A DNA stretch of 64,000 nucleotides, taken from the NCBI GenBank assembly GCA_024704765.1, contig JAKMXF010000299.1:310001-374000 (forward strand). The letters run 5' to 3'. The position numbers were made by a program, and so were the translations under genes. This DNA comes from Oopsacas minuta (lineage: Eukaryota; Animalia; Porifera). The notes under the pieces were generated by a model that was not told the origin of the DNA, did not search any database, and saw only the letters and a program-made list of their open reading frames with translations. Position 1 is the stretch's first letter, and the number at the start of each line of letters is the position of its first letter. Positions 5,691-44,080 of this stretch are shown here, piece after piece.

Positions 5691-7232
5691 ATGATTCGAC
5701 GCTATGAAACAAGTCATGATTACCCTTCATTTCACTCTAATGAACACACAGTATCACTTGCTCTTGTCGGGGAAATAAAACAAGCTCTACTCAACCACAA
5801 CTTCAAATTCATCCTAGATGCAACTGCCTATCTGCTAATATTATTCACTTCAGCTCGTGAATTGGTTCGTTCATGTGTACTTCTATCCAGCACATATAAC
5901 CACCTTCCCAAGAACATAGTAGAAATGATATTGGCTAGAATTGAACGGAAATCAATGCTAATCGAGTCACCAGTATTAATCCCGCTATCAATTGAACGTA
6001 CTATGTATTTCCTGGACACTCAATCTTGGAATAAAGCAGGTAATTGTGCTATCACACATTTAGATAAAAGTCTCAAACATAATCCCCTATTGAAAACTTA
6101 TGCTGGACTAACACATTACATTCTATGGCAAAAAGATAAATTATACGATGCTGAATCGACAAGAAAGGGTATGAAAATTGGTAAATCAAACACTCATCAA
6201 CAACGAATAAAAGATATACTAAAATATTTGGATGACATTTATGCTAACAAGGGAGTATGGGATATTCCATTACATTTGCATATGAAGTTATTAATTGAAG
6301 AGAGAAATGATATACAGAGTGCATTGAATATCGCTAAGCAAAATTTGGACAGTAATAAAGGAGACCTAAATGCATTAGTAACATTAGCGATTTTCTACAT
6401 AGATTTCAATGAATCAGATTTCTATAACAGAGATGAATTGATTAGTATTCTAACTAGAATACACTACATCGATCCTTCGAACTATTTGATGATAAGTCTA
6501 TGTCAGGAAACTGGGATTAGTGAAGAGAATTCTAACTTTATTGTTTCCATAGCAATGGAATTTCTTGACTATCCTTGTAATAAAGATGAACATCTAATGT
6601 GGGAATGTTTATACGGTGCTCTTACTGAATTGAGTAATTCTGTGTTTGAGAAAGTTTTAGCTGAAGAATGGGCAGATAGGAGATCATGGTGGATACCACT
6701 ACATTTTGATATAGATAATCTAATTCAAACTTTCACGATTAATTTAGTGTTATCTTGCTATAAGGCCTTAGTACTTAACACGCTGAATTGGGGCGGTACT
6801 AATCCATATACATTAAAAGCTAAGATGCTTCTCGATCAGCTGACAGATGTGGATTATAATTTAGAGTGTATTTCTAAATTGGTTACATTAGTAGTAGGTG
6901 AATTTATCCCAGAAGAGAAAAGTGATGATTGTATTATGTTAGATTTCTCGAAAGATCTCACGGATGAATCTGAGGAGATAGGGATAACAGATGACGTGGA
7001 ATTGATACCTGTACCTCTCGCGAAAAAGACCAAGTTCTTCCAGCAAGAGGATCTAGCTGCGTATTGCTATATATCAGATCAGTGTTTGGTAAAACAGGAG
7101 ATAGAACGATTATTCTATTTAAGGAGGTATAAAGCTATGGGGCCTCCTAACAACGAGACTGAACCAATGGAATCTGATAATGAATGTTCTCATTTAAGTT
7201 TAGATAATAATGGTTCTGATAGTAGTCAGTAA
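5691..7232 (+). CDS. TAF1A: TBP-associated factor RNA polymerase I subunit A (SL1 complex), intronless
   Basis: 513 aa. The motifs EFLDYPCNKDEHLMWECL and EEWADRRSWWIPLHF...LSCYKALV resemble TAF1A (LDFAGC...AW; EEWNSRKNWWPGFHF...ACEKAFV). Confidence 0.75.
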   Translation: MIRRYETSHDYPSFHSNEHTVSLALVGEIKQALLNHNFKFILDATAYLLILFTSARELVRSCVLLSSTYNHLPKNIVEMILARIERKSMLIESPVLIPLSIERTMYFLDTQSWNKAGNCAITHLDKSLKHNPLLKTYAGLTHYILWQKDKLYDAESTRKGMKIGKSNTHQQRIKDILKYLDDIYANKGVWDIPLHLHMKLLIEERNDIQSALNIAKQNLDSNKGDLNALVTLAIFYIDFNESDFYNRDELISILTRIHYIDPSNYLMISLCQETGISEENSNFIVSIAMEFLDYPCNKDEHLMWECLYGALTELSNSVFEKVLAEEWADRRSWWIPLHFDIDNLIQTFTINLVLSCYKALVLNTLNWGGTNPYTLKAKMLLDQLTDVDYNLECISKLVTLVVGEFIPEEKSDDCIMLDFSKDLTDESEEIGITDDVELIPVPLAKKTKFFQQEDLAAYCYISDQCLVKQEIERLFYLRRYKAMGPPNNETEPMESDNECSHLSLDNNGSDSSQ

Positions 7233-7321
7233 TAAACAGTTTTATACAATTTTCGATGGTATTTTCATTGGAAAATTAAGGTAATTAACTTGAATATTAG
7301 TTTGTATGTTTGTTTATCATA

Positions 7322-7460
7322 TACTATTAACTCCATTATAACGAGCACGGATGTATCGAAGTCTAAGATTGTACAAATATGGTCCTAAACGATTACACTT
7401 TTATACCGAAGTAATTATCGTGGTCTCTTAAGCTTCGATATAACGGGAATAGGCTGTGTA
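7322..7460. mobile_element. pogo/Tigger-like MITE family A
   Basis: Carries the family-diagnostic internal motifs TTGTACAAATATGGTC and CTTAAGCTTCGATATAACGGG; TIRs are decayed. Confidence 0.65.
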
Positions 7461-7497
7461 TTACAAATACTTTTTGTATATTTTAAAGATTAGATAA

Positions 7498-10400
7498 ATG
7501 TCTCAATCCTACAAAGATACTATCATTGAAGTATGGCATTTATTGAGTCGTACATACCTCTATATGAACGCTAAGATAAAGATTCACCTCAGATCAAAGT
7601 ACGCATACAATCTTCGTGATACATACTCTCAATTAACTATCATAGAGAATACTTTACCTAACATGCAGATTCACCCTCTGAAGAGTATGACGTATGCTCA
7701 CTCGATTCTAGATAGGACAAATAAACAGATATTTCCTTTAGAGGAAAATTTATTGAGTACACCTGGCCAGCTGTTCCTGGCTATTGGGCAGATCGGTACA
7801 GGGAAAACTTGGCTTGCACGTCATATAAGTACCTTATGGGCTAATGACCTGATTAATGAAGGCAAAAATATTTTGATATACATTGACTGTGAACTTCCTG
7901 AAGTAAAATCTGCTAAAGATATTCAGACTTGCATATCTTCATTGCGCACGAAAGGTACAAATTTTGTGGATTATTTTGAGCATTTATTCGTGAAAGATGG
8001 TCAAAATCTCATATTTATAATAGATGCATATGACGTATTGCTACGTTATGTTCCTAATAGCCCTCTACACGAACTTGTTAGAAGGAAGATCTTATCAAAA
8101 TCTTCTATTTTGATACTCTCTCGACCTTGTGTGCACTTCTATAACGAAATGAATACAACTTATTTGAACTATACCAAGCTTGAAGTTCTTGGTTTTTCTA
8201 GCAAAATTTGCAATGAATATTTTACCAAATCCTCAATTAAATTGCTAGAAGGATCACAAGCTGTTTTTGTATTTTTAAACATATTTCCTGATCTCAGACA
8301 ATTCGCAAGGTTCCCTCTCATAGCATTCTCTATTATAAAATTAGTTAGTATTGAGAATCTAGAACAATTCGTATCTGTTGATTACATAATGAAACATATT
8401 TGTGTGATAATTATCAACCAACAGCTTAGCCATTATTTAACCGGTGATATCAAATCTCAATACTTGAATATTGTAAGTTTAAATAGCGTATCGAGAAGTA
8501 AATTCCATTCTCTGGGGCATTTATACAAAACTGCTTATCAAGGATTACTCGACTCGTTCAATACAGTACAACAAGATATTCCAACGTTTCATGAAGGGTT
8601 TGCACCGGATGGCATGGGTATTTATTGTACTAATTTCATACAAGTTAATAGCGAATGGAAGCCTCGGTACACGTTTATTAACTTGATAACACAGGAGTTT
8701 CTCGCTGCTTTATACACCAAAGGAAATTTGAAGTCAGGCCAGGAAGAAAGCTATGAAAAAACATTACCGATCTTGCAAAAGAAAACCATTCCCCACTTCA
8801 TGATTCTTGGGTGTAGTAAAGAGTTATTATTAAACGAAGAAGGCAAAGATATTTTCCATTTCTATTTACCTCAACTCAATAATTCCCTCACAATATACGC
8901 TCTATTGCTCAACATTATTATTGAATGCGGGTTTGTACACTATCAGAAAATCAGTGCTACCTTATTATTCCCTTCAAATACAATTGAATTATTAGATTAT
9001 CCAATGGAAGGATGGATATTGAGAGGTGTATCATATTTCCTCAACAAGATTTCGAATTTTACTTCTTTGACCTTTTCAAATTGTTCCATTACAGACCAAA
9101 TTTTGTACTTTTTGATTACAAACATGAATATTAATTCAAACATAACTTTTGTTAATTTACAAGGTAACAAACTCACAGATTCTTCAATCCCGATTATCCG
9201 TAACTCATTTCGTCATATTCTATCTTCTCTACGTAAACTTGACTTAAGTAATAATTCTATAGACGCGAGCCAGGTTATATCTCTCGAATCAGATTTCCCT
9301 CAAATCGAGTTTATCTCACACCAAACTATTCCTCAAGAAATACTCAGTCGAGGAGAAGAATTTGTTTATCAGTACCAACTAGCTTGTAACGAAGGCAGTC
9401 AACAGATTAAGTTCTTTCGTCTTATGGTAGTTGGTTCTGAGGGTGTAGGTAAAACTAGCTTGTTAAAAGCCTTGAGAAATCAACCGTTTGAAGGGAAAGA
9501 AGTTTCTACTGATTTTATAGAAAAAACTGATATTACTATTACGGAATTGAGTAATGACTGGAGTCAGAATCTGAGTTTTAAAGAAAGGCTCAAAGAAACA
9601 CGAGATGATATTTTAGCTCATATAACTGTCAAACGTGTCAAATCACTCACAAACCTGTCAAATTTGGCAGATAATACAAATCTCAGTGAATTGATACTTC
9701 AACCTGAGAGTAACACTGATCTTGATACCGGCCAGATTGATGAAAATACTAACTTAAATTTTACAAAATCTGAGCCAGATTTAGTGCTAGAAAATGATAA
9801 AATTCCAGAAGAAACAAAATTGGAATCTCCTACTATAGAATCTCAACCAGAGGAGATTGATACTCCAACAGTTGAAATTGAACCTGAAATACCTGAAATA
9901 AAAATAGATACGAATGATCCAAATGAAGAAATCTCAAAAATTGATCCTCCCTTTGTTTCCTCCAGCATGCACTTATCAAATTTACCACTTAAAAATATAC
10001 AAGAACACTGGAGTAATCAACGTACTATACTACCAATAGAGTTCTTCACTGTTTGGGACTTAGCTGGACAATCCTATTTCTTCTGTATGCACTCCCTATT
10101 CCTGACCCCCAGGGCTGTATACTTAATGCCAGTCGATTTATCAGTTAACCTAAAAGAGCCTGTGTTACAGAGAAAGAGGGAAACGGGCAGATTAGACAGA
10201 CGTGAAATAAAAGGTAAAGTAACACATCTTGACATTATACAATACTGGATAATGACAATATATTCTGTGGCTAAATCTACTTCAACTGAGGTATATGAAT
10301 GTAAATCTCGTATTATTATTGTATTCACAAAAGCTGATCTAGCAGATGACCCTGTAGAGAAAGCTGCAGCTGATTACAAGTTAATTACAGACTCGCTATC

Positions 10401-11628
10401 TCGTAAGTGTAATTGTCTTTCAATTGTCGATAAGAATTATCATATTGTGAGTGCGAAAGATCGCAGTTTAGAGGGTTTTACAGCTTTGAAAGAATCAATT
10501 CACACCAATGCAGATCAAATTGGGTTTAACCATGCATTACCAGTTCGTTGGTTAGATTTCGCTTTGAATATTCTCTCAAGTTCAAATCCTGTTCTAGGCA
10601 AAGCTGATATCACAAAAATATCTGAGCAGACTAATTGTGCAGGCGATTATACCGAAATCTTACAGCTTTTCCATTCAATTGGTGTATTTTTCTTTAGAAA
10701 AAATATCTTAGTCAAATCCTTACAGAATCTATTAGACATAATTTTCCATGTGGTCTCCCCTATGAATTGTTTAAACTTGATACCATCTCTACCGAAAATA
10801 TCCAAAAGTAAATGCAAGCAAGAAAATTTCCGTCAAGAAATCGAAAATGCTTATACAACCGCGGTTCTTACTGATAACATATTATATGCAATTCTACAAC
10901 GTAACAACTTAACAGAGGTTAAAACCGAAATTACACAACTGTTAGAGGAATTTGGTGTTCTGTTATTCAAAAGCGGACATGGTAAGCATAGAGAACATTA
11001 TATCCCATATTTATTTAAGGAAGATATTACTGCGATATACCAAGCTGAATCCACTGACCAGACTATCTATTTATACTTCCCAGATAATCAAGTACCTACT
11101 TCTTTCTATTTTGCTCTACTTTCTTTATGTCTGGATAGATGTAATGCTTCAAAACATAAGAAATTTTGTAAAAATGAGGATAAATTCTCTTCAGATTGTC
11201 GGAAGCCTCAATGGCAAATGAATTTGAAAATTGATAAACATGATCCAAAACTTGCCTTTGATTGCGTTAAGTTTCAATGGGAATCAAATTTGACTTGCAT
11301 TTTAGACTTCACTGAACATCAGCCATATATTCGAGTTATTTTCCAAGACATAGATTATTCAGATTTGGCTGTACATTCAAGAATGTTCTCTCTTCTCTTT
11401 ACAATACAAAAATGGATAATACAAATTCAACGAGAATTGATATTATCCGGAAAACTTGCTAAAATTGTGCTTAACTGTCCTTGCAATTCATTTGCAAGAA
11501 CTTTAAGACCCTGCGTGTATTTCGAAACTTTCCTCAAACAATCTGGGCATGAATCTCATTTCTATTGTAAAGTTAAACAGACTTATTTTCCTTGGAGTTT
11601 TTTCAATAAATTTCTCCATTTAAGCTGA
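7498..11628 (+). CDS. NACHT-LRR-ROC-COR protein (NLR/ROCO hybrid), 1376 aa; probably the 5' part of a fusion with the downstream caspase
   Basis: NACHT: Walker A GQIGTGKT (7786), Walker B LIFIIDAYD, sensor-1 ILILSRP, WHD YTFINLITQEFLAALY. LRRs: VNLQGNKLTDSSI, LRKLDLSNNSID. ROC GTPase: LMVVGSEGVGKTSLL (9433), WDLAGQ..FFCMHSLFLTPRAVYL (10054), IIIVFTKAD. COR-like: LPVRWL, LQLFHSIGVFFF, LLEEFGVL. Confidence 0.88.
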   Translation: MSQSYKDTIIEVWHLLSRTYLYMNAKIKIHLRSKYAYNLRDTYSQLTIIENTLPNMQIHPLKSMTYAHSILDRTNKQIFPLEENLLSTPGQLFLAIGQIGTGKTWLARHISTLWANDLINEGKNILIYIDCELPEVKSAKDIQTCISSLRTKGTNFVDYFEHLFVKDGQNLIFIIDAYDVLLRYVPNSPLHELVRRKILSKSSILILSRPCVHFYNEMNTTYLNYTKLEVLGFSSKICNEYFTKSSIKLLEGSQAVFVFLNIFPDLRQFARFPLIAFSIIKLVSIENLEQFVSVDYIMKHICVIIINQQLSHYLTGDIKSQYLNIVSLNSVSRSKFHSLGHLYKTAYQGLLDSFNTVQQDIPTFHEGFAPDGMGIYCTNFIQVNSEWKPRYTFINLITQEFLAALYTKGNLKSGQEESYEKTLPILQKKTIPHFMILGCSKELLLNEEGKDIFHFYLPQLNNSLTIYALLLNIIIECGFVHYQKISATLLFPSNTIELLDYPMEGWILRGVSYFLNKISNFTSLTFSNCSITDQILYFLITNMNINSNITFVNLQGNKLTDSSIPIIRNSFRHILSSLRKLDLSNNSIDASQVISLESDFPQIEFISHQTIPQEILSRGEEFVYQYQLACNEGSQQIKFFRLMVVGSEGVGKTSLLKALRNQPFEGKEVSTDFIEKTDITITELSNDWSQNLSFKERLKETRDDILAHITVKRVKSLTNLSNLADNTNLSELILQPESNTDLDTGQIDENTNLNFTKSEPDLVLENDKIPEETKLESPTIESQPEEIDTPTVEIEPEIPEIKIDTNDPNEEISKIDPPFVSSSMHLSNLPLKNIQEHWSNQRTILPIEFFTVWDLAGQSYFFCMHSLFLTPRAVYLMPVDLSVNLKEPVLQRKRETGRLDRREIKGKVTHLDIIQYWIMTIYSVAKSTSTEVYECKSRIIIVFTKADLADDPVEKAAADYKLITDSLSRKCNCLSIVDKNYHIVSAKDRSLEGFTALKESIHTNADQIGFNHALPVRWLDFALNILSSSNPVLGKADITKISEQTNCAGDYTEILQLFHSIGVFFFRKNILVKSLQNLLDIIFHVVSPMNCLNLIPSLPKISKSKCKQENFRQEIENAYTTAVLTDNILYAILQRNNLTEVKTEITQLLEEFGVLLFKSGHGKHREHYIPYLFKEDITAIYQAESTDQTIYLYFPDNQVPTSFYFALLSLCLDRCNASKHKKFCKNEDKFSSDCRKPQWQMNLKIDKHDPKLAFDCVKFQWESNLTCILDFTEHQPYIRVIFQDIDYSDLAVHSRMFSLLFTIQKWIIQIQRELILSGKLAKIVLNCPCNSFARTLRPCVYFETFLKQSGHESHFYCKVKQTYFPWSFFNKFLHLS

Positions 11629-11637
11629 TACCTTCAG

Positions 11638-12761
11638 TGCTTGGATTATCATTCATAGATAAATACCATGGACATATTGTACAGAATTTGGACCTAGAGT
11701 TCATCCTAGAAGCTCTGTTTGAAGAGGGATTAATTAATGGTGAAGAACTTGCTCAAATATTTTCGTTAGAGAAGAAGGAAAAAGTTGAAATGATTTTACG
11801 AAATTTGCCGAATAAAGGGAAGGAATGGGCTCACAAGTTTTATAAAGTATTAAAGTCTAAGAGTGTTGAAAACCGCGAAATAAGGTCTCTATACGAATCA
11901 TACATAGTTGAAAAACTCTATGCAGAAGTTCCTAAAGGTGAAGATCTCGATTTCAGTCGATATCCAATACTGAATAATCCCTGCGGAATTTGTCTCATTA
12001 TCCATATCGAAAATTTTGATGACAATTCCAAAAGGCGAGGTTCTCATTTAGATTTCTTAAACTTAAAGCAAACATTTGAAAACATGAATTTTCTCATACA
12101 TTCGTACGAGGATTCAACTAAAATAGAAATGAGGAAAATTTTAACAGAATTACGCTGTATGGATCATTCGGCTTTTGACACATTTTTCTGTATAGTAATG
12201 TCTCATGGAGATGAAGATGAGTGTATTGTTACTCGTGACATGAAAACTATTAAGAAAGATACAATTCTTAACCATTTTACAGCTGATTCGTGTCCTAGTT
12301 TGGCTGGTAAGCCGAAAGTATTTATATTCCAAGCATGTCGTGGGCAGAAACAAGACCATGGAATAGAAATGATATCAGCTAAAGAGCCTGTTACAACAGG
12401 AGATGAAAAACTAACTATCCAAACAGATGATTTTGCGAATATTCCTGGTAAAATTGAGCATATTGAGTCCGATCGATCTATACCATCCTCTTCACAAGAA
12501 GTTCCGAAAAAGGTGGCTAATTTCGCAGATTTCTACATAGCACAAGCTACAGTGAAAGGTTATGTTTCATATCGATATGTTACTCGCGGTAGTGTGTTCA
12601 TCAGTGCTTTTTGCTCGGTGTTAAAATCCGCGAGATATCACCACCATTTGGTAGATATGATGATAGAGGTTCGTAGACAAGTTTCTATGGTAGACGTCAA
12701 TAGTAATGTACAGTGTCCTGAAGCTACTGATACGTTCACGAAACAATTGTATTTATTTTAG
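11638..12761 (+). CDS. CARD-containing initiator-type caspase, likely the 3' exon of the upstream NLR/ROCO gene
   Basis: CARD-like FIDKYHGHIVQNLDLEFILEALFEEGLINGEE...EMILRNLPNKGKEWAHKFYKVL. Caspase p20/p10 with catalytic SHG (12201) and QACRG (Cys at 12336); linker Asp sites IQTD and IESD; ADFYIA, GSVFI. The ORF-track start is a GTG overlapping the splice acceptor CCTTCAG (11631-11637). Confidence 0.9.
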
Positions 12762-13045
12762 ATAACGCTATTTATACTTTAGTTGAACAGATTGTTTATT
12801 TTGCGTATGATAATTATTAAAATTTCCTTACCAAGAATCCCATGATTTAAGTCACTAAATATTTGCTGGGAGATTTCCATGTTGCAAACTTTTGGGAATT
12901 TGTTCATGCTATGTAGTGCCATTGGGAAATCTGGATCATCTCATAATACATAACCTATTACAATATGTTCCTAATACACTTCAAATTACTGCCTAACTCT
13001 TTATCTTTTCGCTTGCAGTTTTTTCTTAGTTTAGTCTCCTAAATA

Positions 13046-13285
13046 ATGAGTAACAAAGCTCATCCCCCAGAACTAAAGAAATACATGGAGAAACGTGTAT
13101 CAGTTAAGATAGAAAGAGGAAGACACGTAACAGGAATTCTACGTGGATTTGACCCTTATATGAATATTGTACTTGAAGATACGATTGAAGAGATTTCTAA
13201 TACAGAACGTAATAGTATTGGTATGGTAGTTGTGAGAGGGAATAGCATTGTTATGTTAGAAGCTTTGGAGAAGATTATGATATAA
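13046..13285 (+). CDS. SNRPG: Small nuclear ribonucleoprotein G (Sm-G)
   Basis: [14 protein letters not shown]...[13 protein letters not shown]...[19 protein letters not shown], near-identical to Sm-G. Confidence 0.97.
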
Positions 13286-13559
13286 AGAATTCTATGTTCT
13301 TAGATTCCTTCCATTGCATGTCATATTTCTTTAATATATTTATTCTACACAATTAATAGGGTAGAATACATATTAAGCTAAAATGTGTATCAAAACTATC
13401 TTTCACGGTTGTACATACAAATAGATGGGAGACTATAAGTATTTACAATTTTAAGTGACAATTCTCAAGTATCGACTCTATAAATACCCCGAATGGGAGA
13501 TAGAATCATATGTACACACCCTCTTTCATGTATATTCCTTACTATTTATTTTGTATAGA

Positions 13560-15281
13560 ATGCAGAGCTTATCTAACATAAATTCATCAACTCTCCGATT
13601 CTACTACAAGATCAGTACTAATCTGATACCGATACACTTTATACTATTTTCTATTGGTATTATTTGGCTATCTATCCTACCTCTAGAAGATTACAACGGT
13701 AAATGTTATATCTCAGAAAATGCATTACTAGTTGGAATGATAGAATTGAAATTCTCGCAAGATTATAATAAAGCAAAAACATATACAACTACACGAAGCG
13801 ATTTGAAAGCACATGGAATAGCTGTAGAATACTTTGATAATTTACAATTTGAAGTTGCACAACAGAACTTTTCCATTAATCTACCATCTTTATTGGTGGA
13901 ATCTGGGGTTAATACGTATGCACTATTTCATGCTGAAAGGTCATCACATACAGAAATGCTCGTAGTTCATATCAGCATGAATAATCACCGTTTAACTAAG
14001 ACACAAGATATCGCGAATTTCGCGGTTTTCCTCGGCCTAGCAGACTATTTTTCACAGCAAAACTACTGGGCAAGAGACATCCTATTTCTAATGACTTCAC
14101 ATGATGTAATAGGAGTACAAGCTTGGCTACAACAGTACTTAGGAATTGCAGATAACTCACAAATACTAACTAGTCAATCTCTACACTATCATCCTGGGAA
14201 TATTATTGCCATGATTTCAATCAAGTTAAAATCTGAATTCTTCAATTTAGTTCGTATCAAGACTGAAGGAGTAAATGGAATGCTACCTAACTTGGATTTG
14301 GTTAATACTATCTCATTTGTAGCAATGAGAAACTTGAGAATGGCAACGAATTTCTTCCCTTCGAAATCTTTAGAATATAAGGATCTACTGTATAATACAT
14401 TATACATGGCCTGGAATCAGGTCACCGGCATACCTACCGGCCCTCACGGCCCGTTTCTTCATTACGGCATACAAGGGCTAACTATAGAAGCTGTTAATGA
14501 TCCTACAGTACGCACGACACGGCTTTATTCACCCGCTGAGCTTGGGAATTTAGTAGAATCATATATGCGTAGTTTGAATAATCTCCTCGAGACATTACAT
14601 CAATCTTTTAACTTCTATCTTCTCCCAGGTAACAATCGTTACATATCGATTGGTATCTATATTCCCCCGTTAATGTGTATCCTAGCTCCACTCGTTCTTA
14701 AAGCACTTGTATTTTGGATATCTTACCAATATCCTTGGCTGTCTGACCCGAATAATATCCCTCTTGATAACAAAGAGCTTTCAATAAAGTTACTGCATTC
14801 TAATCCTATTCCTCTAGAATCAATAGGTACTATTCTCTTGGCTTATACCTTGATAGTGTTATTGATTATAACACACAAATATTTGTATTTATTCCCAGGA
14901 TTCCCATTTGCAATCGTCCTTACAGTATCTTTGATCACATTCCGATTCTTCACAAATGTAACTAAGGAAAATGCACCGTTTTTCCATTCACTCTTGTTAC
15001 TACTACTTACAATGTCAACTGTCGCACTGTCAATTGTCAATTTCCCTATAGCACTAATAATATCATTGATACTGACAATATTCACAATATTCCCGAGATT
15101 AATCCCTATCTTCTGCCCGATTTTCATTCTAGCTCCTCACCTCACATTATTTATCCCAGATTTATCTTTCCTAGAGAATCTCTATCTAGAGTATGAGATT
15201 AGTCACCGTGTATTTGATGGTTGGGGTTACAGTGCAATATTTTTAATTCTGGTGCCTTTGTTTATATACAAGAATCCTTAG
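13560..15281 (+). CDS. GPAA1: GPI-anchor transamidase subunit GAA1, intronless
   Basis: YISENALL, YWARDILFL, EGVNGMLPNLDLVN, PTGPHGPF..YGIQGLT, LLETLHQSFNFYLL...RYISIGIYIP, multiple C-terminal TMs. The likely ATG at 13560 follows a pyrimidine tract plus TAG. Confidence 0.93.
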   Translation: MQSLSNINSSTLRFYYKISTNLIPIHFILFSIGIIWLSILPLEDYNGKCYISENALLVGMIELKFSQDYNKAKTYTTTRSDLKAHGIAVEYFDNLQFEVAQQNFSINLPSLLVESGVNTYALFHAERSSHTEMLVVHISMNNHRLTKTQDIANFAVFLGLADYFSQQNYWARDILFLMTSHDVIGVQAWLQQYLGIADNSQILTSQSLHYHPGNIIAMISIKLKSEFFNLVRIKTEGVNGMLPNLDLVNTISFVAMRNLRMATNFFPSKSLEYKDLLYNTLYMAWNQVTGIPTGPHGPFLHYGIQGLTIEAVNDPTVRTTRLYSPAELGNLVESYMRSLNNLLETLHQSFNFYLLPGNNRYISIGIYIPPLMCILAPLVLKALVFWISYQYPWLSDPNNIPLDNKELSIKLLHSNPIPLESIGTILLAYTLIVLLIITHKYLYLFPGFPFAIVLTVSLITFRFFTNVTKENAPFFHSLLLLLLTMSTVALSIVNFPIALIISLILTIFTIFPRLIPIFCPIFILAPHLTLFIPDLSFLENLYLEYEISHRVFDGWGYSAIFLILVPLFIYKNP

Positions 15282-15383
15282 TTGTTAATTATTTGTTTGA
15301 AATATTCTGTTTCCTAATTAGCACAGGTTTGTTTCATTGGAATTGCACTGTGGTTTTCTACGCAACTTATCCCTGTACTATAG

Positions 15384-15455
15384 CAGGGGTTCCCAACATC
15401 TTCACCTGTGGACACCCTGCTGTCGTCCGTATGGACCCCAGGTTGGGAACCACTG
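15384..15455. mobile_element. 72-bp hAT/Charlie-like MITE (family B)
   Basis: TIRs CAGGGGTTCCCAAC / GTTGGGAACCACTG. Flanked by TACTATAG and AACTATAG (7/8-identical 8-bp TSD). Confidence 0.8.
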
Positions 15456-15873
15456 AACTATAGTAATCTTGATATCACTGGAACTGTAACGCAGCTGTTC
15501 AATGTTGTGAGATCCTCTCAATGATTTTTGAATAATCTTGAATTATTACTACTTCGAACTCTCCGGCGATTCAAATAATGAATTATCATTTAATAATGCC
15601 TTAATATCTATTACGTAGATGCAATAATATACTTGTGTGCTGAATAACTACCCACAACTTTATGAGATTTGTGTAAGTATTGGAAAACACTATATCAAAT
15701 TCTTAACTAACAACAACAGAGCAAAAATTATTAGTTTAATTAAGTTTAAATTTTAGAAAATCATCCTCTACGTAGAATTTCTAGAATTTCTCTTCATTAT
15801 CTTTTCTCACAGATTTTCATAATTCTTTCTTCTACACTTTGAATAAAACCAATTAATCTCTACGCAATATCAT

Positions 15874-16853
15874 ATGGCAAGTCAGTTATCTATTGCACCA
15901 TATATCTCCCATATAATCCCTCCTACAACCTTACAGGGTATAGCTAAGCAATGGTTAGCAGAAGACGTACCTTCATTTGATATAGCAGCTTGTGTTGTTG
16001 GAGATAAACCTGAGGAATGTGTTCTGTTATGTAAATCTCCTGGTGTGTTATGTGGTGTACCATTCTTCAATGCTGTTTTCCAGCAGCTTAATTGTGACGT
16101 CACGTGGTTCATAGCTGAAGGAACATACATAGATGATACTCCATCTCGTATAGCTGTTGTTAAGGGTCCTGCTAGTTGTATATTACAAGGAGAGAGACCT
16201 GCTCTTAACTGTATAGCCAGAGCGTCAGGGATAGCTACACACGCTAGAGAACTTAGGAGGATAAGAGAAGAATATACATGGGAAGGGCAGATTGCTGGAA
16301 CGCGAAAAACAACACCTGGATTCAGATTGGTAGAGAAGTATGCTTTGTTGATAGGTGGTATATCAACTCACAGGTGAATATTAATATTTTAATATTTATT
16401 ATGTTTTTATATATTGTATTTTCAAGGTATGATCTTTCCAGTATGGTAATGCTGAAGGATAACCATATATGGTCAATGGGATCAATATCTGCTGCCGTGA
16501 AGAGGACAAGAGAAATCGGTGGGTTTTCTATTAAAATAGAAGTTGAGTGTCGTTCGATTGAGGAGGCGATAGAAGCCGCGAAATCAGGTGCAGACATTGC
16601 AATGCTAGATAATTGGAGTCCTGATTCTGCGAAAACCGCAGCCGAGCAATTGAAAAACGACTTTCCGCATTTGATAATAGAATGTTCTGGCGGTATTCGT
16701 AAAGATAATTGTCACTTATATTTCTCACAAAATATTGATGTAGTCAGTATGAGTAGTACTACACAAGGATACGGAGTTGTAGACTTTTCTCTTAAAGTTA
16801 AGAGGGATGACATTGATATTACAAATCCACTTAGAGACAGAATTAAGCAGTGA
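15874..16853 (+). CDS. QPRT: Nicotinate-nucleotide pyrophosphorylase (quinolinate phosphoribosyltransferase), 2 exons, 308 aa
   Basis: Exons 15874-16373 and 16427-16853 with a 53-nt GT-AG intron restore [15 protein letters not shown]. Other motifs: [39 protein letters not shown]. Confidence 0.96.
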
Positions 16854-17013
16854 TTCAGATAAGTTACGTATTTCAGAATTATTATTTATTTTTGAGTTTG
16901 AGTTTAATTATTTCGAAATTTCTATGATTTTAGCAAAAATATATTTTTCAACAAAATTATAATTTTTCTTCTAGCTTAATAATTGTTAAATCTTTTAAAT
17001 TAGCAATAATTCT

Positions 17014-18105
17014 ATGTTTCAAATATTTATACTTTTCATAATCTCCTCAAATTGCCTTTCTTATGGATCAGGTTCAATTAATGACACTCTAATATTATCT
17101 AATGCAAGTGATATTTCTATAACAAATACACTGTTAAATGATGAATTTCCACTTAACATTGATTCTGATTTACAGACTGTTTCATTTAATGATACAATTA
17201 CCAGTGTACTACAACCAACTGACGAATGGCAGACAATACAACCTAACCAATCTATACCAGCTGGTTGTGACATAAGAATTAATCTACAGACTGGTAAGAA
17301 GGAAGCTAAATGGTCTGCAGATCGTAATACAGATAAATTCAGAGTGAAATCACAACTTAATGAAGAGAACAATATTCCAGTTTCCATGTATGATCCATTC
17401 AAATCATCTGAATTTGCATCCATAATCCAAACAGAGAATTATAACACAACAATAAAATTAATTGAATTAGTTAGCTCTACAGAAAATACAACTGATGTTC
17501 TGCAGAATCTAGATGAATTGGAGTTAATGCTTAGCGATGGAGATCTAGCTCTCTCCATTTCCAATACAGAGCACTTCACACTTCTAATTAATCTCCTGAA
17601 TAATGCGAATTTTAACGTTTCTTCAGCAACTTGTCTAGTCCTGGGTTCCATGTGGCAAAATAATCAACAAATCCAGCTTATAGCTATCGAACAGAAAGTA
17701 TTACCTACATTGATACAATTATTTCAAAATTTTAAGAGAGTTAATTATGACATAAATTCTCTATTATTTTCCACATCTACCTTGTTAAGAGGATTACCTT
17801 ATGGATTAGGAATATATTATTTTACTAATTATAATATAGCTCGTTTATTAACAGATATTATTGTTAATAATAGAGGGAATTATAGAATTATTTCTAAAGT
17901 TGTACGGTTTACTGAATATTTGTTAGAAGAGTTTGAGAATGAAGATGATACAGAACTTGAATTGAAAATAAGAGAAATGATTGAGACAATACATAGCTCA
18001 GATTATTGTGCTGCTCTACAGGAGATTATACAATTGGAAGAGATAAGATTAGAATACAGGGTGGAATTGAGTCAAATCACTAGCAAAATTTGTAGTGCGT
18101 ATTAA
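17014..18105 (+). CDS. SIL1: Nucleotide exchange factor SIL1 (BiP NEF)
   Basis: Signal peptide; hallmark LQPTDEWQTIQPNQSIPAGCDIRINLQTGKKEAK; armadillo-like region (LGSMWQNNQQIQ). Confidence 0.85.
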   Translation: MFQIFILFIISSNCLSYGSGSINDTLILSNASDISITNTLLNDEFPLNIDSDLQTVSFNDTITSVLQPTDEWQTIQPNQSIPAGCDIRINLQTGKKEAKWSADRNTDKFRVKSQLNEENNIPVSMYDPFKSSEFASIIQTENYNTTIKLIELVSSTENTTDVLQNLDELELMLSDGDLALSISNTEHFTLLINLLNNANFNVSSATCLVLGSMWQNNQQIQLIAIEQKVLPTLIQLFQNFKRVNYDINSLLFSTSTLLRGLPYGLGIYYFTNYNIARLLTDIIVNNRGNYRIISKVVRFTEYLLEEFENEDDTELELKIREMIETIHSSDYCAALQEIIQLEEIRLEYRVELSQITSKICSAY

Positions 18106-19129
18106 TATTGTAAGCTTTCACAAAATACGACTGCTTTCACAATTTTATAGTTTATTATCATACATAGAATGAAATGCCCATATTTTTGCGTTTAAGACTA
18201 TTAGTTCTAGCTTCAATAAATCTGAGTTCCTATCTCGGCTAGTTCTGAATTCTCCAGTATCTGGAAAATGGTCCTATTAAGCGAATAACAGTATTTAAGA
18301 TAAGTGCTTATGCCTGTATCGGTGGGATATGTCATAGTTATTAACTACTATAAAGTTACATACTACACAATTTAGTATATAAGACATTGCTCTCTTGTTC
18401 AACAGCATTAAACTAGACATTATTCATTCCAAGTGATCTTGAAGAAGATATAGCATTTACGGTAAGTTTTACTTGGGATAATTTATTTTCCAGGAATACG
18501 TGACATGCTGTTTGTGTTTAATCCCCGACAATGTCTGCGGTATTCAGCATGTATATAAAAATTCAATTAACTTTCAATTTCAATTTCGGATGCTTTGGCG
18601 AGTAACTTGATTGAGTGTTTAGTTAGAAATTTTAAAATTCCCACTTTCAGATTCAATTTCAAATACCAAGACAACCAAGTGTTTTAAATATTCCAATAAT
18701 ACAGTGACATGTTGTTTTGTTTCATTCACCAATCATGAAAGAATTTGAAATGTTGTCATGAGTCACAGAATATACCAATCGTTAGATAACTAGGTAATAA
18801 GCATTTGCCCACAAATTCCAACAGCTGTTTCTAGCAAAGATCTAAGCTTTGAAATTTGATGCATAATATTCTGCACGTGCTTTCCAAAAAAATGCTATCT
18901 TCATTAATTAATTATTTGTATCTATTTTTGTGATGACACAGTAGGTGAAAAATGTTACATATATATATATATCATATTTCCGCAAGAGACATGATCTTGA
19001 TACCACAAATTATTATTATTTGCTTTGATGTTTATTCAGTTGAACTTCTATGAATATTTTAGAAATAAAATAAATCTGATCAAGATAAAACTAATACTTT
19101 TGCAAAATATTTTATCATACCCGGCCAGA

Positions 19130-28100: not shown

Positions 28101-30090
28101 CACCAACAACAAGTAAGTGATTGCCACAACAAATACACCCAAATTTTTTCCCCATTCTTCCACTTTTCTACACAATTCCATAATGAAATTGTGATTACAG
28201 CGGGGTTTCACTGTAATACGGTCGTATTTTTATCTCGACTAATATTGATAAATCATCCATTATAGTAAACTCCCGTTATATCAAACGGATACATCAAAAT
28301 ATCCGCTTATATCTATTCTTACATTGTATAAATAGTAACAACTATTTTATCGGCTATATCGAAGTAAATATGTTTGGTCCCTTGAGATTCGATATAACGA
28401 GAGTTGACTGTATTCTTGAAATCTTTCCATCTTGCATTACTAGGCTGATCAGATAGAGCTATTCATAACAGAAGCTAGTATCTTATCTTCACAAGCTAGT
28501 TACATGGTAATGCATTCTTACCAGCATTTATTCACCATGCTCAAACCTGCAATACAAAACTTAACACTCTTACTCAACTCCATATCTACACAATCTGCTC
28601 CTATAAATTCTCAGGCTATCGACCAGCTGAATTATGCAATGGAACATATGTCACAATCCTCGCAGCTGATATTATTAGCTCAAACACCTAATACAAATGA
28701 TGGGTACAATTCAACGAATATTCAATCTACTCTTGGGAGGTTTCACTCACAAAATATTGAAATATCAGTACAATTAAATGAACTGGGGTATAATATAGAG
28801 ACAGTGAGTGAGAGAATTGAGGTTCTATTTGATAATATTAATGACTATTCGAAGGACATTATTGAACTCACAGAAAATGATAATACTTTACGTAATAAAA
28901 CACTCGTAGCTAATTACAAATCAATTGAAGCGAGAAATTTGGGAAATAGTTTGATACAGACATTGAATGAGACCCTAGAAATAATCGCGAATTTTAGCGA
29001 GATTTCTAAAATCGTGCAAAATAAAACGCGAAACTCTCTTCAGAAAGTTTCTCAGATTGAAGCAACAAGTAGACAAGCGGAAATGAATGCATCTCAGGTT
29101 TGATACAAATAATTTCATAAATATTTAAATATTTATAATTCTTCTATTTACAGGTTTTGGGAGAGTTTTCAATCGCAGCTCGTAAATCCCGTGAGAGCTA
29201 TGATATATCAGTACAAGCAGGTAGTATAGCAATAGATGCTAATGCTCAACTTGACATATTCAGAGGAAATATGTCAGAACTGTCACAAGAGCTGTCACAA
29301 TTCACAGCCTCTTTCAATTCAAGTTTATACAGGATACAAGATTATGCTAATAAAGCAGTTAATCAGGATGCTATATTAGATGATCTCAGGGATAATGCGT
29401 ATAAAGGAGCAAGCATTTGTGTTAAACAAGTAATATTTGCTTCAATAGCAGTTGAACCTAGATAAAGGCCACGGGCCACCTATTCAACGACCGATTTTTT
29501 AAGTAAACTAAAACTAAAATAAGTCTTACCCCTCCGGCTCGGGTACTAAAATTAATACGGACTAACTGAAGTACGTCTTATCTGAACATATTTCCTATAC
29601 AATTAGTACAAGAATAGAAAAATGTTTTTGCAAAAGTACCTACATACTAACTGAGTTCTACGGTATTGCATTTAATTTTGAATATTTATTGTAGTTATTA
29701 TGATTATCTAGGTTCAAGAGATTCAAAACATGACACAGACAACTATGAACGAGATTTCACGCTTGTATAAAGAATTAAACGATTCATTTAGCATTCTACA
29801 GCCACCCAAATTCGACATAGAGGAATTTACTAACTCTACCGGAATACTAATCGAAACAATTGCCAATGCAGAACTTAATAATACTGTTCGATTATTGAAG
29901 CAAAAGTAAATTACCCTTTAGTGCTAAAATTAGATTTTATTCTAATAATCAATTTGATATTTTTAGGTTGGTGGATCAGACAAGAATGAGGTTAGAATAT
30001 GTAACCAAATTATCACAACTGAAAGAAGATTTATCTGACCTTCAATACATAGAACGTTCTTTACCTAAATATTGTAACCATGGTGTCTAA
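22133..30090 (+). CDS. Laminin chain, beta/gamma hybrid type (LN-LE-LF-LE-L4-LE-coiled coil), multi-exon
   Basis: Signal peptide and LN domain (exon 22133-22714; next exon from 22795 ending YYYEIADFSVSGRCACNGHA). Many LE repeats. LF/IVB domain (YFVPLIDFVTIEGEEG, FTGTGYASL, IYQLVIRY, CNPITLSLSAELYKG). L4/IVA domain (FLQVLANLSALFVRG, WVETCAC). Coiled coil. The last exon ends LQYIERSLPKYCNHGV* at 30090. Not every internal exon boundary was resolved. Confidence 0.9.
28261..28412. mobile_element. MITE family A, best-preserved copy (laminin intron)
   Basis: 22-bp near-perfect inverted ends TATAGTAAACTCCCGTTATATC / GATATAACGAGAGTTGACTGTA, including the TA TSDs. Confidence 0.85.
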
Positions 30091-43908: not shown

Positions 43909-44080
43909 TACAGTTAACTTCTGTTATATCCAAATACCCGCTTATATCGAAGTCCGAATTTGTGCAAATATTGTTCCTGGCCCTCAGGGTAACATAATTT
44001 CCATCGGCTATATCAGCCTCGTTTCTATCGAAGCAATTATCGCAGTTCCTTGAGCTTCGATATACCCTGAGTTGACTATA
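43909..44080. mobile_element. MITE family A
   Basis: TA|CAGTTAACTTCTGTTATATC ... GATATACCCTGAGTTGACTA|TA. Confidence 0.8.

What the first reader, a model, noticed from the sequence alone, without database searches (positions are those of the whole stretch)
7498..12761. Probable single-chain NLR-ROCO-CARD-caspase: sensor, GTPase and protease joined by a cryptic 71-nt intron
Seen: the NACHT-LRR-ROC-COR ORF stops at 11628, and a CARD+caspase frame (intact SHG/QACRG) follows. Its first in-frame ATG is mid-CARD (aa 52 of the ORF), and the first ATG after the acceptor (11668) is out of frame. A phase-1 donor GTAAAG (11567), a branch-like CTGAT (11625-11629) and an acceptor CCTTCAG (ends 11637) define a 71-nt intron that removes the stop. 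The product is a 1730-aa protein (...HESHFY-LLGLSFIDKYH...). WASHC1 intron 1 has a similarly short branch-to-AG spacing (36071 to 36079). Established: NLR/Apaf-1 STAND ATPases activate CARD-caspases by oligomerisation in trans (inflammasome, apoptosome), and ROC-COR is a dimerising GTPase switch (LRRK2, DAPK). Inference: this is a self-contained inflammasome/apoptosome with an extra GTPase switch. Intron retention would give a protease-less 1376-aa isoform, a possible arming switch. I know no named gene with this architecture.
Basis: partly seen in the sequence, partly recalled or inferred. Interest (0 to 1): 0.95.

Follow-up and report, generated by a model that had tools for sequence, protein, structure and literature searches.

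The report
Single-chain NLR-ROCO-CARD-caspase, no intron
A glass-sponge gene really does encode a pathogen-sensor-type ATPase, a LRRK2-type GTPase switch and a death protease in one 1754-residue chain, but as one uninterrupted reading frame: the stop codon and the "cryptic intron" come from a one-base error in the assembly.

Summary
The window is Oopsacas minuta (glass sponge). The 71-nt intron is not real.

- **Frameshift.** Three short-read contig sets of the same sample carry one extra T after 11614, at full depth. With it, 7498-12761 is one ORF of 1754 aa (…FFNKFLPFKLIPSVLGLSF…).
- **No splicing seen.** No run shows a 11566/11638 joint. The RNA-like run crosses the site unspliced.
- **Orthologues.** Several syntenic orthologues (60-73% identity; four checked at DNA level) are single ORFs. 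They encode the same peptide across the "intron", with mostly third-position changes. Three of the four lack one or both splice signals.

The architecture is confirmed: NACHT, LRR, Roc, COR (fold match to C. tepidum Roco, LRRK1 and LRRK2), CARD and caspase. Both P-loops, the Roc DLAGQ motif, SHG and QACRG are kept in all eight orthologue-group models.

GenBank holds the gene as "Caspase-3-like" KAI6652279.1, bridged by an artificial 53-nt intron. I found no paper describing the architecture.

It belongs to a wider, undescribed Roc-COR-caspase family. That family includes hexactinellid paralogues with other N-termini, and similar fusions in Lingula and Owenia. Only this orthologue group adds NACHT-LRR.

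The function (proximity-activated caspase under two NTPase switches) is inferred. This scan also noted the NACHT-ROC-COR part separately (s1-211856).

The parts
7498..12761 (+). Whole gene. It is one uninterrupted ORF of 1754 aa once the T missing from the assembly after 11614 is counted. There are no introns.
   Evidence: Orthologues are single ORFs of 1717-1747 aa.
7780..8229 (+). NACHT NTPase domain (aa 95-244). Walker A GQIGTGKT is at 7786-7809 and the Walker B region FIIDAYD at 8014-8034.
   Evidence: Pfam PF05729, E 4.7e-14, 53 bits against a cut-off of 26.7. G97, G100, G102, K103 and D179 are invariant in alignment A2.
8995..9357 (+). Leucine-rich repeats (about aa 500-620) between NACHT and Roc. 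They sit where both an NLR (NACHT-LRR) and a ROCO protein (LRR-Roc-COR) have them.
   Evidence: Weak Pfam LRR_1 hit in this copy. Some orthologues carry PF13516 or PF27087. The nearest Atlas clusters are NACHT-LRR and LRR-COR proteins.
9418..10512 (+). Roc GTPase (aa 641-1005). G1 GSEGVGKT is at 9433-9456, G3 DLAGQ at 10057-10071 and G4 TKAD at 10327-10338. An acidic, poorly conserved insert of about 150 aa (low model confidence) splits the domain between G1/G2 and G3.
   Evidence: Pfam PF08477, 42 bits against a cut-off of 27, in two stretches. The best PDB sequence matches are LRRK2 Roc. The motifs are invariant in A1. The insert has low pLDDT.
10513..11565 (+). COR domain (COR-A plus COR-B), aa 1006-1356.
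   Evidence: AF2 model of window:10465-11565: pLDDT 82, pTM 0.75. In Foldseek against the PDB, the top 30 hits are all Roco/LRRK COR structures, with 3dpu/3dpt/6hlu at E 1.6e-7 to 1e-6 over about 350 columns. Pfam COR-A matches 7 of 23 family members. The family profile hits the COR of Lingula, Owenia and Asterias ROCO proteins.
11567..11637 (+). The supposed 71-nt intron. In fact it is coding linker between COR and CARD (…CKVKQTYFPWSFFNKFLPFKLIPSV…).
   Evidence: 18-19 of 25 residues are identical in four orthologues. Nucleotide differences by codon position are 9/15/43. The donor GT is absent in L003, and the acceptor AG is absent in L001 and L002. No joint in the reads.
11611..11616 (+). 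Site of the one-base deletion in the assembly. The reads have CTT where the window has CT. This deletion creates the false stop at 11626-11628.
   Evidence: 'Put in behind 11614: T' in X1 (81.7 of 81.7), X3 (75.9 of 75.9) and X4 (452.5 of 452.5). The DNA alignment shows a one-base gap against the orthologues.
11649..11858 (+). CARD (aa 1385-1454 of the 1754-aa protein).
   Evidence: Pfam PF00619, E 6.8e-9, 36 bits against a cut-off of 23.9.
11985..12752 (+). Caspase p20/p10 domain. The catalytic His lies in SHG at 12201-12209 and the Cys in QACRG at 12330-12344. A conserved IQTD in the intersubunit linker is at 12417-12428.
   Evidence: Pfam PF00656, E 4.3e-51. The best solved relatives are caspase-3 and caspase-8, E about 1e-30. 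The dyad is invariant, and IQTD-like sequence is present in 7 of 8 orthologue-group sequences.
12762..12805 (+). Probable 3' UTR. The RNA-like run's contig ends at 12805.
   Evidence: X4 contig 24 ends at 12805 and runs straight into Illumina adapter. X4 does not hold 12806-13040, whereas X1-X3 do.

Best explanation
**Anatomy (shown).** This is one intronless gene of Oopsacas minuta. It encodes a 1754-aa protein with the order NACHT ATPase, LRR, Roc GTPase, COR dimerisation domain, CARD, caspase.

The stop at 11626 and the shift into the CARD-caspase frame come from a single T missing from the assembly after 11614. No splicing is needed and none occurs.

**Mechanism (inferred from the families).**
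- The protein rests autoinhibited.
- A signal read through the LRR and NACHT-associated region drives nucleotide-dependent NACHT oligomerisation and/or GTP-dependent rearrangement of the Roc-COR dimer.
- Either event brings the covalently attached CARD-caspase modules together.
- Proximity-induced dimerisation then activates the caspase, with autoprocessing at the conserved IQTD in the intersubunit linker.
- The retained CARD could nucleate recruitment of further CARD proteins.

The gene is one member of a wider Roc-COR-(CARD)-caspase family with interchangeable N-terminal modules. That pattern suggests the ROCO core is the common switch and the N-terminus the variable sensor.

I put the anatomy at about 0.95 and the activation mechanism at about 0.5.
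For: **Extra T.** It is present at full depth in three read sets. With it the frame runs 1754 codons to the stop at 12761.

**Orthologues.**
- Seven relatives of 60-73% identity (P0002-P0008) are single called ORFs of 1717-1747 aa. Three of them (L001-L003) and the cluster member P0183 (L007) were looked up and sit in the same Seipin-TELO2-TAF1A-[gene]-SmG-Gaa1-QRPTase neighbourhood.
- They encode CK.K…FFN..LPFK.IP across the junction.
- Substitutions there are biased to the third codon position (9/15/43), and three of the four DNA-checked orthologues lack one or both splice signals.

**Transcript.** X4 behaves as RNA:
- Its depth is about 16-fold higher on the neighbouring SmG gene.
- Its contig ends in adapter at 12805.
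- It does not hold the 12806-13040 spacer that X1-X3 hold.
- Its contig 11244-12805 crosses the site unspliced, at the same depth as the NACHT part.

**Domains.**

**Catalytic motifs.** Both P-loops, the Roc G3 motif DLAGQ, SHG and QACRG are kept in all eight models of the orthologue group (P0001-P0008). G4 TKxD and G5 SxK are invariant in alignment A1.

**Family.** The paralogue family and the invertebrate Roc-COR-caspases are.
Against: - No protein-level or functional data exist.
- The kind of the runs is not on record. That X4 is RNA is my inference.
- Logan contigs drop rare variants, so a minor spliced isoform or a minor frameshift allele cannot be excluded.
- X1, X3 and X4 come from one sample, probably the one that was assembled, so they are not independent individuals.
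- The window's own copy does not reach Pfam COR-A or LRR thresholds.
- The AF2 model of the whole Roc-COR was poor (pLDDT 44). Only the COR-only model is good.
- With two NTPase switches, it is unknown which one gates the caspase.
Confidence: 0.85

Rival explanations
1. Two reading frames are joined by a cryptic 71-nt GT-AG intron (11567-11637). Intron retention gives a protease-less 1376-aa isoform that acts as an arming switch.
For: In the window as assembled, the signals exist and removing them restores the frame. The GenBank model KAI6652279.1 also bridges the break with a different short intron, 53 nt at 11572-11624.
Against: - No joint at this place in four runs, including the RNA-like X4, whose contig runs straight through.
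- The reads carry an extra T that makes the intron unnecessary.
- The 'intron' encodes a peptide conserved in all orthologues, with third-position substitutions. The donor is GC in L003, and the acceptor AG is absent in L001 and L002.
- With the T restored the segment is 72 nt, so its removal would only delete 24 conserved residues.
Confidence: 0.03
2. The missing T is a real allele of the sequenced animal: a frameshifted, possibly pseudogenising haplotype. It would not then be an assembly error, and one gene copy would end after COR.
For: Contigs drop rare variants, so a minority haplotype would not show. The assembly was Illumina-polished with Pilon (PMC10280926), which should remove many indels.
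Against: - All three read sets show the T with depth_with equal to total depth.
- A second indel, a C at 12930, is likewise wrong in the assembly against the reads. This points to residual long-read indel errors.
- The downstream frame is fully intact, with conserved catalytic residues.
Confidence: 0.05
3. Two independent adjacent genes: an NLR-ROCO gene and a CARD-caspase gene with its own promoter, or a trans-spliced or operon-type downstream cistron.
For: The genome is extremely compact, with same-strand genes 100-300 nt apart. An AG lies just before the second frame.
Against: - No in-frame ATG before the middle of the CARD.
- Orthologues are single ORFs.
- Depth in X4 is equal over both halves, and one contig spans the junction.
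Confidence: 0.01
4. The anatomy is the same, but the ROCO core alone is the working switch. The NACHT would be a degenerate or scaffolding appendage, or the protein would serve non-immune regulated proteolysis rather than danger sensing.
For: Most family members (P0009-P0012, P0015-P0027, and the Lingula and Owenia proteins) have Roc-COR-caspase without NACHT. The gene is a single-copy syntenic orthologue rather than a fast-expanding array, which is unlike typical invertebrate NLR repertoires.
Against: NACHT Walker A and the Walker B acidic residue are invariant across orthologues of 52-70% N-terminal identity. This argues for a working ATPase.
Confidence: 0.25

Closest known systems
NLR inflammasome sensors (NLRC4, NLRP1) with caspase-1, and the Apaf-1 apoptosome with caspase-9
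   Same: A STAND ATPase with a repeat sensor. CARD-mediated, proximity-induced activation of a CARD-caspase. NACHT, LRR, CARD and a caspase with the SHG/QACRG dyad are all present here.
   Different: In those systems the caspase is a separate protein recruited in trans, and the death-fold effector domain of the NLR is usually N-terminal. Here the CARD-caspase is covalently C-terminal, there is no N-terminal death-fold domain, and a Roc-COR GTPase lies between sensor and protease.
ROCO proteins (LRRK2, LRRK1, DAPK1, MFHAS1; Chlorobium tepidum Roco)
   Same: An LRR-Roc-COR core. The Roc is closest to LRRK2 Roc by sequence, and the COR fold matches CtRoco, LRRK1 and LRRK2. An output domain lies C-terminal to COR.
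   Different: The output is a CARD-caspase instead of a kinase, a death domain or nothing. An N-terminal NACHT is added. The Roc carries an acidic insert of about 150 aa.
Prokaryotic metacaspase-NACHT-WD40 fusions (PMC3501461) and AP-GTPase/COR conflict systems with variable effectors (PMC8195603, PMC7159879)
   Same: The design principle is a single chain of sensor repeats, an NTPase switch and a C14-fold protease or other effector. LRR-Roc-COR with swappable C-terminal effectors is described for bacteria.
   Different: Those carry metacaspase or CHAT-type proteases, not true animal caspases with a CARD. None described combines NACHT and Roc-COR in one chain, and they are prokaryotic.
GenBank KAI6652279.1 / UniProt A0AAV7JUM9, 'Caspase-3-like [Oopsacas minuta]', 1736 aa
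   Same: It is the same gene, with the same fused domain content.
   Different: It is an automatic model that hides the assembly frameshift behind an invented 53-nt intron (11572-11624) and so lacks 18 conserved residues. It is named only after its caspase domain and is not discussed in the genome paper, which has zero mentions of caspase, NACHT or NLR.
Uncharacterised Roc-COR-caspase proteins of Lingula anatina (XP_013407220.1, XP_013412607.1) and Owenia fusiformis (CAH1786849.1), plus hexactinellid paralogues (such as O. minuta KAI6658320.1)
   Same: Roc, then COR, then a C-terminal caspase in one chain. Their COR regions are hit by the sponge family profile.
   Different: None has a NACHT. 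Owenia has an N-terminal Bcl-2 domain instead. Pfam lists no CARD for the lophotrochozoan proteins. Whether these fusions share one origin with the sponge family was not tested.

Membership tests
NLR (NACHT-LRR receptor) | NACHT NTPase domain with Walker A and Walker B | tested here: met
   PF05729 at 53 bits against a cut-off of 26.7. GxxGxGK and the acidic Walker B residue are invariant across orthologues.
NLR (NACHT-LRR receptor) | Leucine-rich repeats C-terminal to the NACHT | tested here: inconclusive
   This copy has only a sub-threshold LRR_1 hit, E 0.007. Some orthologues carry PF13516 or PF27087. The nearest Atlas clusters are NACHT-LRR proteins, at scores below 0.9.
NLR (NACHT-LRR receptor) | N-terminal effector or death-fold domain (CARD, PYD, Death) | tested here: not met
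   No Pfam domain lies in aa 1-94. The only death-fold domain is the CARD at aa 1385-1454, downstream of COR.
ROCO | Roc GTPase with G1, G3, G4 and G5 motifs | tested here: met
   PF08477 at 42 bits against a cut-off of 27. GSEGVGKT, DLAGQ, TKxD and SxK are invariant in A1. The top PDB hits are LRRK2 Roc.
ROCO | COR domain immediately C-terminal to Roc | tested here: met
   Pfam and PDB sequence searches of this copy are negative. The AF2 model (pLDDT 82) matches the CtRoco COR at E 1.6e-7, plus LRRK1 and LRRK2, and the top 30 hits are all ROCO proteins. COR-A matches 7 of 23 family members. Profile links reach Pfam-positive COR proteins.
Caspase (peptidase C14A) with CARD prodomain | Peptidase_C14 fold with the His (SHG) and Cys (QACxG) dyad | tested here: met
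   PF00656, E 4.3e-51. Caspase-3 and caspase-8 at E about 1e-30. The dyad is invariant.
Caspase (peptidase C14A) with CARD prodomain | CARD N-terminal to the protease domain | tested here: met
   PF00619 at 36 bits against a cut-off of 23.9.
Caspase (peptidase C14A) with CARD prodomain | Aspartate-specific autoprocessing and proteolytic activity | not testable with these tools
   There is only a conserved IQTD-like motif in the intersubunit linker, in 7 of 8 orthologue-group sequences.
Spliceosomal intron at 11567-11637 | Spliced reads joining 11566 to 11638 | tested here: not met
   No joint there in X1, X3, X4 or X5. Contigs run through.
Spliceosomal intron at 11567-11637 | Splice signals conserved, and interior free of coding constraint | tested here: not met
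   The donor GT is lost in L003, and the acceptor AG is lost in L001 and L002. The interior encodes a conserved peptide with a 9/15/43 codon-position bias.

The most novel reading that the evidence does not exclude
Glass sponges, and independently or ancestrally some lophotrochozoans, have an undescribed class of caspase-activating platforms: 'ROCO-caspases'. In these a Roc-COR GTPase dimer, not an adaptor complex, directly gates a covalently attached caspase, and the N-terminal sensor modules are interchangeable. This locus would be the extreme case, with a STAND ATPase and a ROCO GTPase wired in series to one protease: a two-switch, single-chain inflammasome/apoptosome in one of the earliest-branching animal lineages.
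Probability: 0.45. Interest if true: 0.8.

Novelty: new variant of a known kind. Interest (0 to 1): 0.68.

Why it matters
Caspase activation is understood as recruitment in trans to NLR, Apaf-1 or death-receptor platforms. ROCO GTPases are known in animals mainly as regulators of kinases (LRRK1/2, DAPK1).

A conserved chain that joins NACHT, Roc-COR and a CARD-caspase gives a natural, minimal system. It could be used to ask how nucleotide switches are coupled to proximity-induced protease activation, and whether GTPase-gated caspases are an old animal invention.

The result also has a practical side. The published assembly and its GenBank model are wrong at this site. The gene is named only 'Caspase-3-like', so domain-architecture surveys of sponge immunity have overlooked it.

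Tried and rejected
- **Operon or trans-splicing at the AG at 11637.** I considered this at the start because of the compact same-strand gene order. I dropped it once the orthologues proved to be single ORFs.
- **Rfam scan of 7000-13600.** Nothing found.
- **AF2 of the whole Roc-COR region with 12 sequences.** pLDDT 44, unusable. Replaced by a COR-only alignment of 23 sequences, which worked.
- **Sequence searches of the post-Roc region.** phmmer and hmmsearch against the PDB found only Roc-part matches or noise. Pfam finds no COR in the window's own copy.
- **Pfam on the N-termini of ten paralogues.** Essentially nothing recognisable.
- **Protein Atlas.** No cluster combines NACHT and Roc. All scores were 0.82 or below, so these are leads only.
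- **Literature searches**. No description of NACHT-Roc-caspase or Roc-COR-caspase. The O. minuta genome paper mentions neither caspases nor NLRs, and a bivalve caspase survey does not mention Roc, COR or GTPase.
- **Not done.** I did not identify the species behind the ENA and Logan orthologue assemblies.
Full report
**1. What is in the window**

ORF 7498-11628 (1376 aa) ends at TGA 11626-11628. A second open frame runs 11637-12761 (374 aa).
- GTAAAG at 11567, CTGAT at 11625-11629 and AG at 11636-11637.
- The first in-frame ATG of the second frame only at residue 52, inside the CARD.
- An out-of-frame ATG at 11668.

Pfam gives NACHT (aa 95-244, 53 bits), Roc (42 bits, two stretches) and a weak LRR for the first frame. 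It gives CARD (36 bits) and Peptidase_C14 (174 bits) for the second. The neighbours are TAF1A upstream and, downstream, an Sm-like protein and Gaa1. The window is a very compact, mostly same-strand, intron-poor animal genome.

**2. The stop and the "intron" are an assembly artefact**

I laid four public runs on 7200-13100. No run shows a joint at 11566/11638 or anywhere near it. Contigs run straight through.

All three runs of the window's own organism (X1, X3, X4, one sample) carry one extra T behind 11614. The depth carrying it equals the total depth (81.7, 75.9 and 452.5). With CTT instead of CT the first frame reads …FFNKFLPFKLIPSVLGLSFIDKYH…, straight into the CARD-caspase frame. That gives 1754 codons and one stop, at 12759-12761.

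A second indel between reads and assembly lies at 12930. The published assembly is PacBio-based with Pilon polishing (PMC10280926), so residual one-base indels are plausible.

**3. Independent confirmation from relatives**

A protein search identified the organism as Oopsacas minuta. It returned the GenBank model KAI6652279.1 ("Caspase-3-like", 1736 aa) and seven relatives of 60-73% identity and 1717-1747 aa. All of these carry NACHT, Roc and caspase Pfam hits, and most carry a CARD hit.

Four loci were fetched: three of these relatives (L001-L003) and a cluster member from a Logan run (L007). They come from three ENA assemblies and that run. Each is one uninterrupted called ORF in the same gene order: Seipin, TELO2, TAF1A, [gene], LSM/SmG, Gaa1, QRPTase. 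They are therefore orthologues.

Across the supposed intron they encode CK(V/L)K(Q/R)(T/I)(Y/F)F.W.FFN(K/R)(F/L)LPFK..P. This matches the +T reading of the window at 18-19 of 25 residues.

Nucleotide differences in these 25 codons fall 9, 15 and 43 on codon positions 1, 2 and 3. The donor is GC in L003, and the acceptor AG is absent in L001 and L002. This is coding sequence under purifying selection, not an intron.

The GenBank model bridges the same frameshift with a different invented intron, 53 nt at 11572-11624. It therefore lacks 18 conserved residues.

**4. Transcript evidence**

The kind of the runs is not on record, but X4 behaves like RNA:
- Its depth is about 400-450 over the gene and 7239 over the start of the SmG gene, while X1 and X3 stay flat near 80.
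- Its last contig ends at 12805, 44 nt past the stop, directly followed by Illumina adapter.
- It is not a holder of the spacer 12806-13040, which X1-X3 hold at 0.88.

X4's contig 11244-12805 crosses the junction unspliced and with the extra T. Depth is similar over the NACHT and caspase halves. I read this as one mRNA with a continuous ORF. This is an inference, because contigs drop rare isoforms.

**5. Domain anatomy**

*NACHT.* Walker A GQIGTGKT and the Walker B acidic residue are invariant.

*Roc.* G1 GSEGVGKT, G3 DLAGQ, G4 TKxD and G5 SxK are invariant. An acidic insert of about 150 aa with low model confidence separates G1/G2 from G3. The best solved relatives are LRRK2 Roc.

I tested it three ways.
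- Pfam COR-A matches 7 of 23 family members at the aligned position, best E 1.9e-6.
- An AF2 model of aa 990-1356 built on a 23-sequence alignment reached pLDDT 82 and pTM 0.75. Its top 30 Foldseek PDB hits are all Roco, LRRK1 or LRRK2. The C. tepidum COR structures 3dpu, 3dpt and 6hlu score E 1.6e-7 to 1e-6 over about 350 columns.
- The family's COR profile hits the Pfam-positive COR regions of Lingula, Owenia and Asterias ROCO proteins.

COR is confirmed, so the protein is a ROCO protein.

*Caspase.* The closest solved relatives are caspase-3 and caspase-8, E about 1e-30. SHG and QACRG are invariant, and an IQTD-like site in the intersubunit linker is present in 7 of 8 orthologue-group sequences.

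**6. A wider family**

An exhaustive profile-free search with Roc-to-caspase of an orthologue found, at 30-48% identity, a set of further long proteins. They carry Roc, a COR-like region and a C-terminal caspase.
- One is a second O. minuta protein (KAI6658320.1, 1689 aa).
- Others are paralogues in the same ENA assemblies as the orthologues. These include tandem Roc-COR-CARD-caspase genes without any NACHT.

Their N-terminal 400-900 residues are unrelated to this gene's NACHT-LRR and have almost no Pfam matches.

Further out, Roc-COR-caspase chains exist as uncharacterised proteins in Lingula anatina and Owenia fusiformis. The Owenia protein has an N-terminal Bcl-2 domain.

So the Roc-COR-caspase fusion is not unique to this locus. 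The addition of NACHT-LRR was found only in this syntenic orthologue group. No architecture-wide census was possible, so that restriction is provisional.

**7. How it probably works**

*Shown:* a single chain with two intact NTPase switches, a dimerisation domain, a CARD and an intact caspase, conserved over 60-73% identity.

*Inferred from established knowledge:*
- NACHT and Apaf-1 STAND ATPases oligomerise on activation.
- Roc-COR forms nucleotide-regulated dimers through COR.
- Initiator caspases are activated by induced proximity.

On that basis, a signal-dependent change in oligomeric state brings the tethered caspase domains together. They dimerise and self-cleave at IQTD.

The LRRs sit where both an NLR and a ROCO protein have them, so they could serve either switch. 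Most family members lack NACHT, so the ROCO core may be the primary gate and NACHT-LRR one of several interchangeable input modules.

The gene is single-copy and syntenic rather than part of an expanding array. That fits a housekeeping death or stress switch as well as it fits a pathogen receptor.

**8. Comparison and novelty**

The protein works like an inflammasome or apoptosome, but it fails the NLR criterion of an N-terminal effector domain and has the protease in cis. It is a true ROCO protein with a new output domain.

The nearest design precedents are:
- bacterial metacaspase-NACHT-WD40 chains (PMC3501461);
- bacterial LRR-AP-GTPase-COR conflict proteins with variable effectors (PMC8195603).

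Ten full-text searches found no description of NACHT-Roc-caspase or Roc-COR-caspase in animals. A 2024 survey of metazoan NLR inflammasomes treats sponge NLRs and caspases only as separate proteins (PMC11508797). The gene exists in GenBank only as an automatic, slightly wrong model.

I rate it a new variant of known kinds. It is interesting for the evolution of cell-death and immune signalling, but it lacks the splicing-switch story. This scan's other note on the same stretch (s1-211856, NACHT plus ROC-COR without an N-terminal death fold) agrees with what I tested.

Noticed in passing
window 12930: The short-read contigs of X1 and X3, and of the relative X5, carry an extra C behind 12930. This is a second one-base indel of the assembly, in the spacer before the SmG gene. 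The assembly may hold more such frameshifts that split or truncate ORFs.
   Followed up: no
window 7354-7448; also 28272-28401, 39747-39762, 43938-44069: A dispersed repeat of about 100-130 bp with inverted ends (GCTTCGATATAACGGG and its complement). It sits in intergenic spacers. Read depth there is about 30-40 times the genome level, with many loose ends, so it is probably a MITE-like element. There are 7 matches in the window against 0.23 expected.
   Followed up: partly
window 13046-13285: A 79-aa Sm-like (SmG/LSM) gene lies directly downstream and is conserved in that position in all orthologous loci. Depth in run X4 over its start is about 16-fold that of the caspase gene.
   Followed up: partly
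P0035 (Owenia fusiformis CAH1786849.1, 1362 aa): One chain with the order Bcl-2 domain, Roc, COR-A, caspase. All four are above Pfam cut-offs. It combines a Bcl-2-family domain and a caspase under a ROCO switch and is named only 'unnamed protein product'.
   Followed up: no
P0091 (Asterias rubens XP_033637020.1, 1270 aa): One chain with the order Neuralized, Roc, COR-A, Death, TIR. This is another ROCO protein with immune or death-type output domains.
   Followed up: no
L004 (ERZ20067936 ptg000228l, 7836-10838 and 15274-18120) and L005: The most divergent species with an orthologue also has several Roc-COR-CARD-caspase paralogues without NACHT. Two lie in tandem within 18 kb of a contig end, in gene-poor DNA unlike the compact syntenic locus.
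   Followed up: partly
P0016 (Logan contig, 1865 aa), residues 158-246: This paralogue has a second, partial caspase-domain match near its N-terminus (E 1.4e-7) in addition to the C-terminal caspase.
   Followed up: no
window 9827 and 12800-12890 (run X5, organism B): The related organism B, whose laid contigs are mostly 90-95% alike to the window, has a 24-nt in-frame insertion after 9827, inside the acidic Roc insert. It also has a replaced 89-nt stretch just after the gene's 3' end. Both are consistent with these two segments being the least constrained parts.
   Followed up: no
L006 (SRR2064712 contig, 5746 nt): This contig holds a complete 1814-aa Roc-COR-caspase paralogue with 253 nt and 48 nt flanks, and it ends in Illumina adapter. 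It looks like a full-length transcript, which would show that family members are expressed as single mRNAs in another species.
   Followed up: partly
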